Origin: Auanema rhodensis
Lineage: Eukaryota > Animalia > Nematoda
Reading direction: 5' to 3'
Assembly: GCA_964057225.1 (NCBI GenBank)
Contig: OZ059895.1
Coordinates: 15,810,001-15,874,000, forward strand
DNA length: 64,000 nt
This document shows positions 23,927-27,400 of the stretch, piece after piece. Within the stretch, counting starts at the first letter, position 1; each line of letters starts with the position of its first letter. The position numbers and the translations under genes are program-made. The notes under the pieces were generated by a model that was not told the origin of the DNA, searched no databases, and worked only from the letters and a program-made list of their open reading frames with translations.

Positions 23927-24454
23927 ATGCCAGCTCCGGCATATCACGATTTGTCTTTTGAGTTCGAGAACAAGCAAATTCACTTCAGTATTACCCAGCA
24001 CGAAAATAGTGATCTTGTGGTAATATATGAAGTTGATTAAGATTTGTTTTGTAACATGCATTATAGACTTTCTCGAACATCGGACGTATCGGACAAATAA
24101 TTGAAGTAATCTTCCCAGACCCTATTATCAACGAATTTAATATAAGACGAAAGCAGAAAGGTGTAGAATACGAGTGTAAGCAACTTCTTGGTGCTGACGA
24201 CGTATGATTACTTTCTTAACGAAAATATATAGACAATTCTGATTCAGGAGGCTTCTCATCTTTTTATCAGGCGTCTGGTCATATCACTCGCTCAAGGAAG
24301 CCGCCGTAAATCATTAATTGTTTCTCTAGGTATCCTGTCTTTATATAATAAATAAGTATTGAAATGAAATTCAGGGTTTGATGGCCTATCTAATGAAATT
24401 ATCGCAGCGGCCATCGCATCAGTGGAAAATTATTTACAAGTTAGTGAAAAATAA
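23927..24454 (+). CDS. PSMG3: Proteasome assembly chaperone 3 (PAC3/PSMG3)-like
   Basis: Four exons, ~130 aa: VTFSNIGRIGQII...YECKQLLGADDEASHLFIRRLV...RKSLIVSLG, paralleling PAC3 VTQFGKMG...TKVLLGQDE...RAVLLAV. Confidence 0.72.
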
Positions 24455-27400
24455 AAATTGCAACCGGTTGCTAGACTGTTTTTTAAAAAATGATGCGTTC
24501 TTTTTATTTTAATTAATTGGCGTTTATTACAGCCAGCGCGGGCTACTGTCTAGTTTCGATTCTAAAGGAGCTGCAGAAAAAAAGAAAAAAACTATTTTTT
24601 TACCAAAGGTAATATATTCAATAAGTACTAATTGTATAATTTAATTGTTTTCAAGACTAATTTCGTAAATCATGTAAAGACAACAGAACGATCTCTTCAA
24701 GATCAACAATTAGCAATTCATGGTGGTATTAATGATCTCTATAAATGGCAACGCAAACAAAACCGTGATAAGAAGTAGAATAACTTTTTTTCCGATTTTT
24801 TTAAAAAGTTCTTCTTATTAGGTTTGAGCTCTTAGACGGACCACCTTACGCAAATGGTGTACCCCATACTGGTCATGCCATTAATAAAATTTTAAAAGAT
24901 TTCATAGTGAAAAGTCGGATATTCTTAGGATATGAGTTAGTTGACTTTAACTCATAAATTGACATGTATCTTATATTAGAGTTCGTTTTCGTCCTGGCTG
25001 GGATTGTCACGGTTTGCCAATCGAATTAAAGATAGCAAAGAGTGTTAGAGTAACCAATTATTTTCTAATTTTTTCCTAAGATAAGCATTATTTTAGAATA
25101 AAACTCCTGTAGAGATTAGAGCTTTATCCAGAGAAGTTGCTTCCGTTGCTTTAGCTAAGCAGATGAATAGTTTTAAGTTTGTGAATAATTATTTTCTGAG
25201 CTATGTGTGATATCTTTCAGACGATGGGGTGTCTCTGGTGATTTTGACAATCCCTATGTAACTATGGATAAATCATATGTAGCGGAGCAATTGCGTGTAT
25301 TCGGAAAAATGATCGAGAAAAAGCTTGTATATAGAGCTTTCAAGCCTGTATATTGGTTAGTGATCCATTAACATTTAAGTTATATTTTATCTAATATAGG
25401 TCTCCAAGTTCTCGTACTGCTTTGGCTGAATCAGAATTAGAGTACAATGATAAACATGAAAGTACCGCTGCCTATTTCCGTTTTAAGGTTTTCATTGCTT
25501 TTTAGTTTCAATTACATAATGTAATGTTCAGGCTATTGACATTGATTGGAACGATGTTCAGTTAGATGGTGAAGCCATTAAAAAACCTAGTGTTTTTTAT
25601 TTAATGGTATGAAGTTTGATTCAATGCTACTAAGTTCTAAGCTGTTTAGGTTTGGACATCTACACCTTGGACTCTCCCATTAAATAATGCTGTAGCAGTT
25701 TCGAATACAGCTGAATATGTTGCTGTACAGTTTGAAAATGAATTGAAGTAGGAAGGAGGTTGATAACCAGAAAAATTGAGGTTTCAGAAATCCTGTAGCA
25801 GACGTTTACATAGTTTCTAAAGAATTACTGACAACTATATCTGAAACGTTAGGACGTAAACTAATCGTTGTCGGAAACATCAGTGGCAGCAAATTAGAAG
25901 GAAAACATTACAGAAGTTGTTGGTAAGAAGAATTTCTGGGCGATATTATTATATTATTCGATTAATATAGGTATAATGAATTAGCTCAGCCTATTTTATC
26001 AGCTTCTCATGTTACAATGACTATGGGAACTGGACTTGTACACACCAGCTATGCTCATGGATTCCAAGACTATGACGTTTGTTCTCTTTGAAAACTTCGA
26101 GTTATATCTTTATATAGGTCGCGAAAGCAAACAATGATGAGGTTTTAAGTTTTGTTGATGAAGATGGAAAATATACAAGGCAGATGGGCCATGATTTAGA
26201 TGGGAAGTTTGTACTTGGAGCTGGACAGAAGGAAGTACTTCGGTAACGTATTCGATAAAGCATTGAAGACATTATCAACATATTTCAGATTACTTAAAAA
26301 AGATTTTGTTCATCTAGACAAGTATGTTCATTCCTATCCATATGATTGGAGAACTAAAAAGGTTTTTTGTTTTGAAAAAAAGAAAAAGTAATGGAAATAA
26401 TTCAGCCTGTTATAATTCGTAGCAGTGCTCAATGGTTCATAAATGTGGATGAAGTTGGAAAGAGAGCTTCTCAACTTATTGAAAATATTCAAATAGGAAG
26501 TGGAGAATCAGGTATTGTATATAGAGCCTATTGTTTGAAAAATATCTATATTTTTAGATCTCTCTCAAGCTTTATCACGAATTGTAACCACTCGTCCTTC
26601 TTGGTGCATATCTCGTCAAAGGGTTTGGGGAACGCCTATACCATCTATTGTCGATAATAATGGTAATTAGGAAGTAAATTATCTAAAAAAAATCCTTTGT
26701 TAAAGGAAACTCCTACACTTCAATTGAATTAGCTGAAAGAGTTGCTGAATTAATTGAAAAGAATGATTCGGATGTGTGGTGGACATGTAGTCTTGACGAT
26801 CTATTAACAGACAAAGTGAGTTTTTTCTGAGTTTCTACTTCACAATAGTTTTATATAAGGTTAAACAATCATTAAATATTGAAAATACAAACAACCTTCG
26901 AAAAGGAGATGATATCATGGATGTCTGGATAGATAGCGGGGTAGCCTGGCATTGTGCTCGTCACAATTACGAAGATGCTGATTCAAGTGTATTGAGAATA
27001 TATTATCTGGAAAGCATGTTATTTTCTTCCAGATTGCTGCAGATGCTGTACTAGAAGGAGTTGATCAATTCCGTGGATGGTTCCAGTCTCTGTTACTCAC
27101 CTCAACAGCTCTTCAAGTTAGAAGATATTAATTTTTACTAGTTACTATTAATTTTTAGGATATTGCACCGTATAAACGAGTATTTGTTCATGGTTTCTGT
27201 GTTGATGATAACAATAAGAAAATGTCTAAATCTATTGGAAATGTTGTTGACCCAGAAGTGGTTAGTTTTCTTCAGCTATTCTTTTAAATTTATATCAAAA
27301 AAATGTGATAGTTACACTTGTGTTCCACTGAGATTCGAACCCACTACTGCACTTTTGCAACATGCAGTCTTCTTCTCATTTGTTATCGCGTACCACACCC

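What the first reader, a model, noticed from the sequence alone, without database searches (positions are those of the whole stretch)
24330..24610. Mito-IleRS appears to start inside the last PSMG3 exon in another frame: shared acceptor, mutually exclusive mRNAs
Seen: the IleRS frame ([25 protein letters not shown]) is closed upstream by TAA, the nearby ATGs at 24490/24493 are out of frame, and the next in-frame ATG lies after the HIGH motif. An ATG at 24381, 6 nt after the PSMG3 final acceptor (AATTCAG, 24374), opens [39 protein letters not shown]. This is basic and presequence-like, overlaps ~74 nt of PSMG3 coding sequence, and joins IleRS in frame through a 36-nt GT..AG intron (24497-24532). 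An AATAAA overlaps the PSMG3 stop. Inference: cis-splicing at 24374 plus polyadenylation gives PSMG3, whereas SL trans-splicing at the same acceptor gives iars-2. That would make a dual-coding exon linking proteasome assembly and mitochondrial translation. Alternatives are a one-base assembly error near 24511 (an extra A would give [17 protein letters not shown]...) or a non-AUG start.
Basis: partly seen in the sequence, partly recalled or inferred. Interest (0 to 1): 0.8.

Follow-up and report, generated by a model that had tools for sequence, protein, structure and literature searches.

The report
Overlapping PSMG3 and mitochondrial IleRS genes
In this nematode the mitochondrial isoleucyl-tRNA synthetase gene starts inside the last coding exon of the proteasome-chaperone gene PSMG3, in another reading frame; the overlap is conserved across nematodes and looks built for one mRNA to make both proteins by leaky scanning.

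Summary
The iars-2 (mitochondrial IleRS) ORF starts at ATG 24381, 6 nt after the last PSMG3 acceptor, in the +1 frame of PSMG3.

The proposed 36-nt intron is wrong. Intron-free RNA contigs from four runs join 24439 to 24533, a 93-nt GT..AG intron. That intron contains the genomic PSMG3 stop (24452-54) and the AATAAA.

The resulting N-terminus, [20 protein letters not shown]|QRGLL.., matches iars-2 N-termini of Ancylostoma, Haemonchus and C. elegans. The same +1-frame overlap occurs in eight other nematode loci or transcripts from clades III-V.

A new observation: no ATG occurs in any frame between the PSMG3 ATG and the iars-2 ATG (310-337 nt) in the window and five other lineages. Anisakis has one. 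Codon choice enforces this: NAC is used 23 of 24 times before a G-starting codon, against 24 of 64 elsewhere in PSMG3 (P=3e-7). The effect is also seen in exon 1. The PSMG3 ATG has a pyrimidine at -3 in all six genomes.

Together with contigs that run from PSMG3 into iars-2, this points to a bicistronic mRNA read by leaky scanning. SL trans-splicing at the shared acceptor remains possible and could not be tested here. I found no paper describing this arrangement.

The parts
23920..24019 (+). PSMG3 exon 1. The mRNA 5' end lies at the acceptor ttgttgtag|AAG. The ATG is at 23927, in a weak context (T at -3, C at +4).
   Evidence: The RNA contigs begin at 23918 with 2 unmatched letters. Translation; start context.
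24067..24201 (+). PSMG3 exon 2
   Evidence: RNA joints; splice-site coordinates.
24248..24329 (+). PSMG3 exon 3. The TAG at 24327-29 closes the iars-2 frame just upstream of the shared exon.
24330..24374 (+). PSMG3 intron 3 (45 nt), ending in the acceptor AATTCAG
   Evidence: Joint 24329->24375 in all 4 runs.
24375..24439 (+). Shared dual-coding exon. PSMG3 frame: (G)[21 protein letters not shown]. Frame +1: iars-2 [19 protein letters not shown](N).
   Evidence: Both frames are conserved in orthologues.
24381..24383 (+). iars-2 start codon, formed by the PSMG3 codons GAT GGC (Asp-Gly). It is the first ATG in any frame after the PSMG3 ATG.
   Evidence: The homologous xAT-Gxx start is seen in 8 other species.
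24440..24532 (+). iars-2 intron 1 (93 nt, GTTAGT..TTACAG).
   Evidence: Joint 24439->24533 in 4 of 4 runs, and no contig covers the stretch. The donor sits 59 nt after the A of the ATG, exactly as in A. duodenale and C. briggsae.
24533..24608 (+). iars-2 exon 2 ([25 protein letters not shown]). In the spliced RNA the PSMG3 frame ends here at TAG 24551-53 (..[11 protein letters not shown]).
24656..24935 (+). iars-2 exons 3 and 4 (24656-24774 and 24822-24935). Exon 4 carries the HIGH motif (HTGH).
   Evidence: Pfam PF00133 matches exon 4 with E=1.7e-10.
24980..29009 (+). Rest of iars-2, made of many short exons. WCISRQ lies at 26602, KMSKS at 27219, and the last exon (28748-29009) carries a CxxC..CxxC pattern. 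Stop TAA 29007-09.

Best explanation
Shown:
- The window comes from a clade V (rhabditid) nematode.
- PSMG3 (proteasome assembly chaperone 3, about 125 aa, 4 exons) and iars-2 (mitochondrial IleRS) share the exon 24375-24439.
- iars-2 starts at ATG 24381, in the +1 frame of PSMG3. The ATG is formed by PSMG3's Asp-Gly codons.
- After 59 nt, a 93-nt intron (24440-24532) joins this exon to the IleRS body.
- The 19-20 overprinted codons, together with the first part of exon 2, form a basic, presequence-like N-terminus of about 31 aa.
- The overlap is ancient. It is present in Caenorhabditis, Pristionchus, Ancylostoma, a metastrongyle-like species, Steinernema, Anisakis and an ascarid.

Inferred:
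- The main functional RNA is a mature PSMG3-iars-2 mRNA that is trans-spliced just upstream of the PSMG3 ATG.
- Ribosomes that initiate at the weak-context PSMG3 AUG make PSMG3.
- Ribosomes that scan past it meet no AUG in any frame for about 310 nt, then initiate at the iars-2 AUG.
- PSMG3 therefore acts like a protein-coding overlapping upstream ORF, and the strength of its AUG sets the PSMG3:IleRS ratio.
- A shorter PSMG3-only mRNA, polyadenylated inside the intron, and an SL-capped iars-2 mRNA starting at 24375 may also exist.
For: RNA evidence:
- In four runs, one intron-free contig of about 3.37 kb runs from 23918 through all PSMG3 exons. It joins 24439->24533 and continues through iars-2.
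- Logan RNA contigs of other nematodes show the same continuity. L003 has a 122-aa PSMG3 ORF overlapping a 967-aa IleRS ORF by 59 nt. L007 and L009 are similar.

Start codon:
- The window's N-terminus aligns with A. duodenale MAYQLRILQRLCS.., Haemonchus MAFQLKRLQPLCS.. and C. elegans Q7Z261 MASRTNALQPLCK...
- The iars-2 ATG is at frame offset +1 in all six genomic loci analysed.

Linkage:
- More than 20 nematode gene predictions fuse PSMG3 to IleRS.

AUG desert:
- There are no ATGs between the two starts in the window (316 nt between the two ATGs), C. briggsae, A. duodenale, P. pacificus, S. carpocapsae and L003. Anisakis has one.
- 310-nt windows of the iars-2 CDS hold 6-7 ATGs on average and never zero.
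- Given the protein sequence and local codon usage, the probability of no out-of-frame ATG is 8e-5 for the window. Fisher's combined P over 5 lineages is 1e-5.
- N/D/H/Y codons before a G-starting codon are NAC in 23 of 24 cases in PSMG3. In the adjacent iars-2 CDS, 78 of 107 are NAT (P=2.5e-10).
- Elsewhere within PSMG3, NAT:NAC is 40:24 (P=2.9e-7). In exon 1 alone it is 1:10 before G against 19:17 elsewhere (P=0.01).
- None of the aligned nematode PSMG3 sequences has a Met between its start and the iars-2 start position. Human PAC3 does have one there.

Start context:
- The PSMG3 ATG has T or C at -3 in 6 of 6 species.
Against: - De Bruijn contigs can merge two mRNAs that share the 65-nt exon. 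They also clip short SL or poly(A) tips, so the bicistronic molecule is not proven (the caveat is printed).
- No raw reads, 5' ends, Ribo-seq or protein data were available.
- A canonical AATAAA overlaps the PSMG3 stop in the window, and another lies 17 nt after it in C. briggsae. This suggests a separate short PSMG3 mRNA.
- On a long mRNA, PSMG3 would terminate far upstream of the poly(A) tail, which would normally invite nonsense-mediated decay.
- The iars-2 AUG itself has T at -3.
- The codon-order permutation test is only modest in each species (P 0.015-0.39).
- I built the PSMG3 exon models in L004-L006 and L008 by hand.
Confidence: 0.6

Rival explanations
1. Two mutually exclusive mRNAs arise from one pre-mRNA. 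Cis-splicing at 24374 plus cleavage and polyadenylation after AATAAA 24450 gives PSMG3. SL trans-splicing at the same acceptor (24374|24375) plus removal of the 93-nt intron gives a monocistronic iars-2 mRNA whose first AUG is 24381. On this view the long contig is an assembly merge or a minor by-product.
For: - The genome carries SL1 RNA gene arrays (earlier notes returned; I did not test them).
- In every species the iars-2 ATG is the first ATG after the nearest upstream PSMG3 acceptor. The distance is 6-12 nt in the window, A. duodenale and C. briggsae, and about 90 nt with no ATG in P. pacificus, C. angaria, S. carpocapsae and Anisakis.
- AATAAA lies at or near the PSMG3 stop in the window and C. 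briggsae.
- Contigs would clip 22-nt SL tips and short poly(A) tips (caveat).
Against: - It does not explain the selected absence of AUGs in PSMG3 exons 1-3, which would be discarded with the outron (exon 1 alone P=0.01).
- It does not explain the conserved weak PSMG3 start context.
- No SL-joined end was seen in any contig. L009 begins inside PSMG3 coding sequence, not at an SL.
- P. pacificus, C. angaria, S. carpocapsae and Anisakis have no acceptor next to the ATG.
- P. pacificus and Anisakis show no poly(A)-signal-like hexamer after the PSMG3 stop.
Confidence: 0.27
2. A canonical SL2-type operon. PSMG3 ends at AATAAA 24450, the 24455-24532 stretch is an intercistronic region, SL2 is trans-spliced at 24532|24533, and iars-2 initiates at a non-AUG codon in exon 2. 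The 24439->24533 joint would then be fortuitous cis-splicing.
For: - AATAAA lies about 80 nt upstream of a good acceptor (TTATTACAG). The stretch between is U-rich and contains a small palindrome, GCAACCGGTTGC.
- This spacing is typical of C. elegans operons (from my own recall, not checked here).
Against: - There is no in-frame AUG until after the HIGH motif.
- The donor at 24440 sits exactly where the donors of A. duodenale and C. briggsae sit, 59 nt after the ATG.
- The MAY.. N-terminus is conserved, including in the C. elegans UniProt entry.
- C. angaria and Anisakis have no intron or spacer at this point.
Confidence: 0.04
3. An assembly or sequencing error near 24497-24520 (for example a missing base) hides a conventional start at ATG 24490.
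For: Only the presence of ATG 24490/24493 just upstream of the IleRS exon.
Against: - The RNA contigs splice this stretch out entirely, and no letter differences or indels were reported where contigs lie.
- A start at 24490 has no counterpart in any orthologue.
Confidence: 0.02

Closest known systems
Eukaryotic bicistronic mRNAs with overlapping ORFs, such as mammalian MOCS2A/MOCS2B (reviewed in PMC9607355, which turned up and which I did not read in detail), and viral leaky-scanning mRNAs
   Same: - Two unrelated proteins are encoded in different frames of one transcript, with a short overlap.
- The downstream AUG is reached only if the upstream AUG is bypassed.
- The first AUG is in a weak context, and no AUGs intervene.
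   Different: - Here the upstream ORF is a full-length conserved chaperone of about 105 codons, kept AUG-free by codon choice.
- The overlap supplies a mitochondrial presequence.
- The arrangement sits in an SL trans-splicing organism, which has a standard way of separating cistrons.
- Translation by leaky scanning is inferred here, not shown. For MOCS2, alternative first exons were later invoked (from my own recall).
Nematode operons, of SL2 type and SL1 type. In the SL1 type the upstream poly(A) site abuts the downstream trans-splice site (Williams, Xu and Blumenthal 1999, from memory). General reviews turned up.
   Same: - The genes lie on the same strand and are tightly linked, in a cluster conserved across nematodes. 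fath-1, Nop10, PSMG3 and iars-2 are syntenic in C. briggsae, A. duodenale, C. angaria and S. carpocapsae.
- PSMG3 itself looks like a downstream operon gene. Its contig starts about 140 nt after the end of the upstream gene's contig.
   Different: - There is no intercistronic region at all. The coding sequences overlap by 59-120 nt.
- The downstream start codon lies inside the upstream ORF.
- Standard 3'-end formation followed by SL2 trans-splicing would give an iars-2 mRNA without its AUG.
Overlapping upstream ORFs (oORFs) that set main-ORF translation. C. elegans tars-1 also makes two ThrRS forms through alternative translation initiation (PMC10196762; abstract seen).
   Same: The choice of start codon on one mRNA decides which product is made, and a mitochondrial aaRS is involved.
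   Different: - Here the upstream ORF is a separate, conserved protein-coding gene, not a regulatory peptide or an isoform of the same protein.
- The tars-1 mechanism is reinitiation, not leaky scanning.
Shared-exon loci resolved by alternative splicing in C. elegans, for example cha-1/unc-17 (from memory), ceh-44/cone-1 (PMC11789633) and alternative trans-splicing of sma-9 (PMC2904332)
   Same: One locus and promoter yields two unrelated or distinct products that share exonic sequence.
   Different: In those cases the shared exons are non-coding or read in one frame. Here a single exon is read in two frames for two proteins.

Membership tests
PSMG3 / PAC3 (Pfam PF10178) | Sequence match to the PAC3 family profile or to a solved PAC3 structure | tested here: met
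   The window's single exons are too short to score. The spliced protein is 59% identical over 117 aa to the N-terminal part of Parelaphostrongylus P0029, a protein on which Pfam records PF10178. 11 of 14 nematode orthologues match PF10178, with best E=1.6e-9. A profile of these orthologues hits human PAC3 (2Z5E) at E=0.0012. Membership of the window protein therefore rests on orthology.
Mitochondrial (bacterial-type) isoleucyl-tRNA synthetase, iars-2/IARS2 | Class I catalytic core with HIGH and KMSKS motifs, a tRNA-synt_1 domain, and orthology to known IARS2 | tested here: met
   HTGH lies in exon 4 and KMSKS at 27219. PF00133 matches two exons with E about 1e-10. The N-terminal 412 aa are 60-65% identical to strongylid and C. 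elegans iars-2. The last exon shows a CxxC..CxxC pattern.
Mitochondrial (bacterial-type) isoleucyl-tRNA synthetase, iars-2/IARS2 | N-terminal mitochondrial targeting presequence | tested here: inconclusive
   About 31 residues precede the conserved ..[11 protein letters not shown].. core. They include 5 K/R and 2 H, and the only acidic residue is at position 29. No trained predictor was available, and import was not tested.
Bicistronic mRNA translated by leaky scanning | One mature mRNA molecule carries both ORFs | tested here: inconclusive
   Intron-free contigs span both ORFs in the window species (4 runs, 1 study) and in at least 3 other species. Contigs cannot prove a single molecule.
Bicistronic mRNA translated by leaky scanning | No AUG in any frame between the first and second start codons | tested here: met
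   Zero ATGs in 310-337 nt in 6 sequences, and one in Anisakis. The absence is enforced by codon choice.
Bicistronic mRNA translated by leaky scanning | First AUG in a suboptimal context | tested here: met
   A pyrimidine at -3 in 6 of 6 species, and +4 is G in only 1 of 6. The nematode optimum (A at -3) is from my general knowledge and was not measured in this genome.
Bicistronic mRNA translated by leaky scanning | Demonstrated initiation at both AUGs on the same mRNA | not testable with these tools
   Needs Ribo-seq, reporters or proteomics.
   Only assembled contigs were served, and the single read-laying run shows no loose end there. SL tips are normally clipped by assemblers.
   AATAAA is present at 24450, but no contig covers 24440-24532. 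Hexamers are absent in P. pacificus and Anisakis.

The most novel reading that the evidence does not exclude
Across rhabditid nematodes (clades III-V), the essential mitochondrial IleRS may have no mRNA or start-codon region of its own. It would be translated from the PSMG3 mRNA by ribosomes that leak past the PSMG3 AUG and scan about 310 nt of coding sequence kept free of AUGs by selection. Its mitochondrial presequence would have been overprinted on the C-terminal helix of PSMG3. This would hard-wire a fixed translational ratio between a proteasome assembly factor and mitochondrial translation capacity. It would also be a natural, ancient animal example of a full-length protein-coding overlapping uORF.
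Probability: 0.45. Interest if true: 0.78.

Novelty: new variant of a known kind. Interest (0 to 1): 0.66.

Why it matters
- Gene finders systematically mis-model this locus. More than 20 nematode "IleRS" entries are PSMG3-IleRS fusions, and C. briggsae QX1410 truncates PSMG3. The corrected structure would repair two essential gene models across nematodes, including parasites.
- Long-conserved same-strand coding overlaps between unrelated cellular genes are rare in animals. This one shows a mitochondrial presequence created by overprinting.
- The AUG-free upstream ORF is a clean sequence-level signature of leaky scanning. It can be tested directly in C. elegans or C. briggsae by synonymous edits.
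- If confirmed, it shows that an SL trans-splicing organism still uses true bicistronic translation, and that proteasome assembly and mitochondrial translation are translationally coupled.

Tried and rejected
- Pfam on single PSMG3 exons gave nothing because they are too short. I resolved PSMG3 identity through orthologues.
- A start at ATG 24490/24493 or a frameshift error is rejected, because that stretch is intronic in the RNA.
- A PSMG3-IleRS fusion protein is rejected for the window. The PSMG3 frame stops 6 codons into exon 2. The C. angaria "fusion" P0009 depends on a predicted intron, and the genome reads TAA-A-ATG at that point.
- C. elegans, H. contortus and B. malayi loci could not be fetched.
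- PSMG3 exon 1 of C. angaria was not found, so that species is left out of the AUG counts.
- Supplements of two SL-mapping papers contain no entry for iars-2, C25A1.7, CBG12225 or CBG12226.
- Literature searches for PSMG3 together with iars-2, and for leaky-scanning bicistronic mRNAs in C. elegans, found no description of this locus.
- Hairpins in the intron (an 18-bp stem in P. pacificus, a small palindrome in the window) were considered as Ur-like elements. They are not conserved in form, and I did not pursue them.
- The sigma-70 promoter and terminator scan is irrelevant to a eukaryote.
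Full report
**1. Observation**

- ATG 24381 and ATG 24393 lie in the frame that later encodes [25 protein letters not shown].
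- In genomic sequence that frame is interrupted by a single TAA at 24509-11.
- ATG 24490 and 24493 are out of frame.
- The PSMG3 frame reads (G)[25 protein letters not shown] and stops at TAA 24452-54. AATAAA at 24450-55 overlaps the stop.
- After the first exon, the next in-frame Met comes after HTGH.

**2. RNA evidence**

One sequencing study with four runs holds the stretch. All four are served as assembled contigs, and the contigs lack every intron, so they derive from RNA.

In each run one contig of about 3.37 kb starts at 23918. It passes through 23918-24019, 24067-24201, 24248-24329 and 24375-24439, then joins 24439 to 24533 and continues through the IleRS exons (splice sites).
The intron is 24440-24532 (93 nt, CAA|GTTAGT ... 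TTATTACAG|C).
- The depth figures are fully accounted for by the exons, so no contig covers 24440-24532.

With this intron, ATG 24381 plus 59 nt plus the C at 24533 reads [27 protein letters not shown].. in frame with IleRS. In the same RNA the PSMG3 frame reads ..[11 protein letters not shown] and stops at TAG 24551-53. The product is therefore not a fusion protein. The genomic PSMG3 stop and the AATAAA are intronic with respect to this RNA.

**3. Identity of the two genes**

IleRS:
- Pfam PF00133 matches two exons.
- HTGH, WCISRQ and KMSKS are present, and the last exon carries a CxxC..CxxC pattern.
- The N-terminal 412 aa are 60-65% identical to strongylid and C. elegans iars-2.

PSMG3:
- The spliced protein is 59% identical to the N-terminal part of a Parelaphostrongylus protein on which Pfam records PF10178.
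- 11 of 14 nematode orthologues match PF10178.
- A profile of these orthologues hits human PAC3 (2Z5E) at E=0.0012.

The similarity pattern places the window in a clade V nematode near the Strongylida. Earlier notes of this scan report SL1 RNA gene arrays elsewhere in the genome. I did not test those notes.

**4. Conservation**

Linkage. A search with the last IleRS exon found a C. angaria "IleRS" whose N-terminus is PSMG3. A follow-up search found more than 20 nematode IleRS predictions carrying a PSMG3-like N-terminal part. They include Ancylostoma, Necator, Ostertagia, Heligmosomoides, Angiostrongylus, Parelaphostrongylus, Mesorhabditis, Steinernema, Halicephalobus, Aphelenchoides, Anisakis, Syphacia, Thelazia, Wuchereria and Onchocerca. 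The linkage is therefore general in clades III-V, and gene finders regularly fuse the two genes.

N-terminus. Unfused iars-2 N-termini align with the window's:
- A. duodenale: MAYQLRILQRLCSNCKNTF..
- Haemonchus: MAFQLKRLQPLCSRCRIV..
- C. elegans Q7Z261: MASRTNALQPLCKPSKRII..

Loci read directly. I examined eight loci or transcripts (models). In C. briggsae, a second Caenorhabditis (RNA contig L003), C. angaria, P. pacificus, A. duodenale, a metastrongyle-like RNA contig (L007), S. carpocapsae and Anisakis, the iars-2 ATG lies inside the last PSMG3 coding exon. In the six modelled genomes, which include the window, it is at frame offset +1. In most of them it is made by a conserved xAT-Gxx codon pair of PSMG3 (Asp-Gly, Asp-Asp, Tyr-Glu). 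An ascarid RNA contig (L009) has it at the adjacent His-Ala pair.

Donor position. In the window, C. briggsae and A. duodenale the exon ends exactly 59 nt after the A of the ATG. In C. briggsae, A. duodenale and P. pacificus the PSMG3 stop is the last codon before the donor (TAA|GT or TAG|GT). In S. carpocapsae it lies 3 nt before the donor. In the window that codon is CAA, so the frame runs on. C. angaria and Anisakis have no intron at this point. This fixes 24440 as the homologous donor and ATG 24381 as the ancestral start.

**5. New observation: an AUG-free PSMG3 ORF**

No ATG occurs in any frame between the PSMG3 ATG and the iars-2 ATG in these sequences:

| Sequence | Distance between the two ATGs (nt) |
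|---|---|
| Window | 316 |
| C. briggsae | 310 |
| L003 (Caenorhabditis sp.) | 310 |
| A. duodenale | 310 |
| P. pacificus | 322 |
| S. carpocapsae | 337 |

The 244 nt of L007 that are available also contain none. Anisakis has one, 4 nt after the start, opening an 8-codon ORF.

Tests of whether this is more than chance:
- 310-nt windows of the iars-2 CDS hold 6-7 ATGs on average and never zero.
- Permuting codon order gives modest values per species (P 0.015-0.39).
- Conditioning on the protein sequence and local codon usage is stronger. The probability of no out-of-frame ATG is 8e-5 for the window, and Fisher's combined P over five lineages is 1e-5.

The cause is visible in codon choice. N/D/H/Y codons that precede a G-starting codon are NAC in 23 of 24 cases in PSMG3.
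- In the adjacent iars-2 CDS the same pairs are NAT in 78 of 107 cases (P=2.5e-10).
- Before non-G codons within PSMG3 itself, NAT:NAC is 40:24 (P=2.9e-7).
- In exon 1 alone the ratio is 1:10 before G against 19:17 elsewhere (P=0.01).
- Codons that precede Cys or Trp codons never end in A.
- None of the aligned nematode PSMG3 sequences has a Met between its start and the iars-2 start position. Human PAC3 does have one there.
- The PSMG3 ATG has T or C at -3 in all six genomes.

**6. Mechanism**

Three features form the classical signature of leaky scanning:
- a weak first AUG;
- a selected AUG desert that ends exactly at the second start codon;
- RNA contigs that run from the 5' end of PSMG3 into iars-2.

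The desert in exon 1 is the key discriminator. I therefore favour, at about 0.6, a mature PSMG3-iars-2 mRNA on which PSMG3 behaves as a protein-coding overlapping upstream ORF.

- In every species the iars-2 ATG is the first ATG after the nearest upstream acceptor.
- A poly(A) signal sits at or near the PSMG3 stop in the window and C. briggsae.
- Assemblers would hide SL and poly(A) tips.

A canonical operon with SL2 at 24533 and a non-AUG start is unlikely, and so is an assembly error.

What is shown: the splice structure, the start-codon position, the dual coding, their conservation and the AUG desert. What is inferred: the single-molecule nature of the mRNA, leaky scanning, and mitochondrial import of the N-terminus.

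**7. Comparison with known systems and novelty**

The locus resembles overlapping bicistronic mRNAs such as MOCS2A/B, viral leaky-scanning mRNAs and overlapping uORFs. It differs from nematode SL2- and SL1-type operons in having no intercistronic region and a downstream start codon inside the upstream ORF.

Both overlapping CDSs are implicit in public annotation, for example C. briggsae CBG12226 and iars-2. I found no paper that mentions PSMG3 together with iars-2, or this kind of arrangement in nematodes. No C. elegans PSMG3 appeared among the annotated relatives.

I rate the finding a new variant of a known kind, with interest about 0.66.

**8. Limits**

- The C. elegans, H. contortus and B. 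malayi loci could not be fetched.
- The PSMG3 exon models in four loci are hand-built, although their translations match orthologues.
- The SL2-like reading of the L003 5' end (CCAAG|GGTGAATG) and the nematode start-context consensus both rest on my memory.

Noticed in passing
window 23609-23782 and 23918: The contig of the upstream same-strand gene ends at 23775-23782, and the PSMG3 contig starts at 23918-20. The uncovered gap of about 140 nt is typical of an operon intercistronic region, so PSMG3 itself is probably a downstream operon gene. The neighbourhood fath-1 / Nop10 / small gene / PSMG3 / iars-2 is syntenic in C. briggsae and A. duodenale.
   Followed up: partly
L003 1-10: The Caenorhabditis RNA contig begins CCAAG|GGTGAATG. 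The C. briggsae genome has TTCAG|GGTGAATG at that point. The non-genomic CCA fits the 3' end of SL2-family leaders (..ACCAAG, from memory). This suggests that SL2-type trans-splicing forms the 5' end of the PSMG3-iars-2 RNA.
   Followed up: no
L004 4066-4104 (P. pacificus iars-2 intron 1); window 24461-24472: A perfect hairpin of about 18 bp (AAAAAAGACACAGTGCAC..GTGCACTGTGTCTTTTTT) fills the P. pacificus intron directly after the PSMG3 stop. The window has a small palindrome, GCAACCGGTTGC, at the equivalent place, and C. angaria has CGAGCCTAATAGGCTCG. Their function is unknown.
   Followed up: no
window 51956-53168: A tandem duplication (period about 727 nt) of a tRNA gene followed by a U1 snRNA gene. 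The tRNA copies lie at 51956-52027 and 52683-52754, and the U1 copies at 52280-52441 and 53007-53168. Scores are identical between copies.
   Followed up: no
L001 6810-7030 (C. angaria, PSMG3 intron): A long, near-perfect inverted repeat (about 100-nt arms) lies inside the PSMG3 intron and looks like a foldback or MITE-type insertion. PSMG3 exon 1 of C. angaria could not be located.
   Followed up: no
protein database: PSMG3 orthologues were found for C. tropicalis, C. briggsae, C. brenneri and C. sp. 36, but none for C. elegans. The C. elegans gene may be unannotated or modelled differently.
   Followed up: no
L002 2559-2949 and proteins P0009, P0024-P0029, P0043, P0047, P0048, P0050, P0056-P0060, P0069, P0071, P0076: Public gene models at this locus are often wrong. 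Many are PSMG3-IleRS (or even fath-1-PSMG3-IleRS) fusions, and in C. briggsae QX1410 PSMG3 is truncated at a TAG inside its intron 3.
   Followed up: partly
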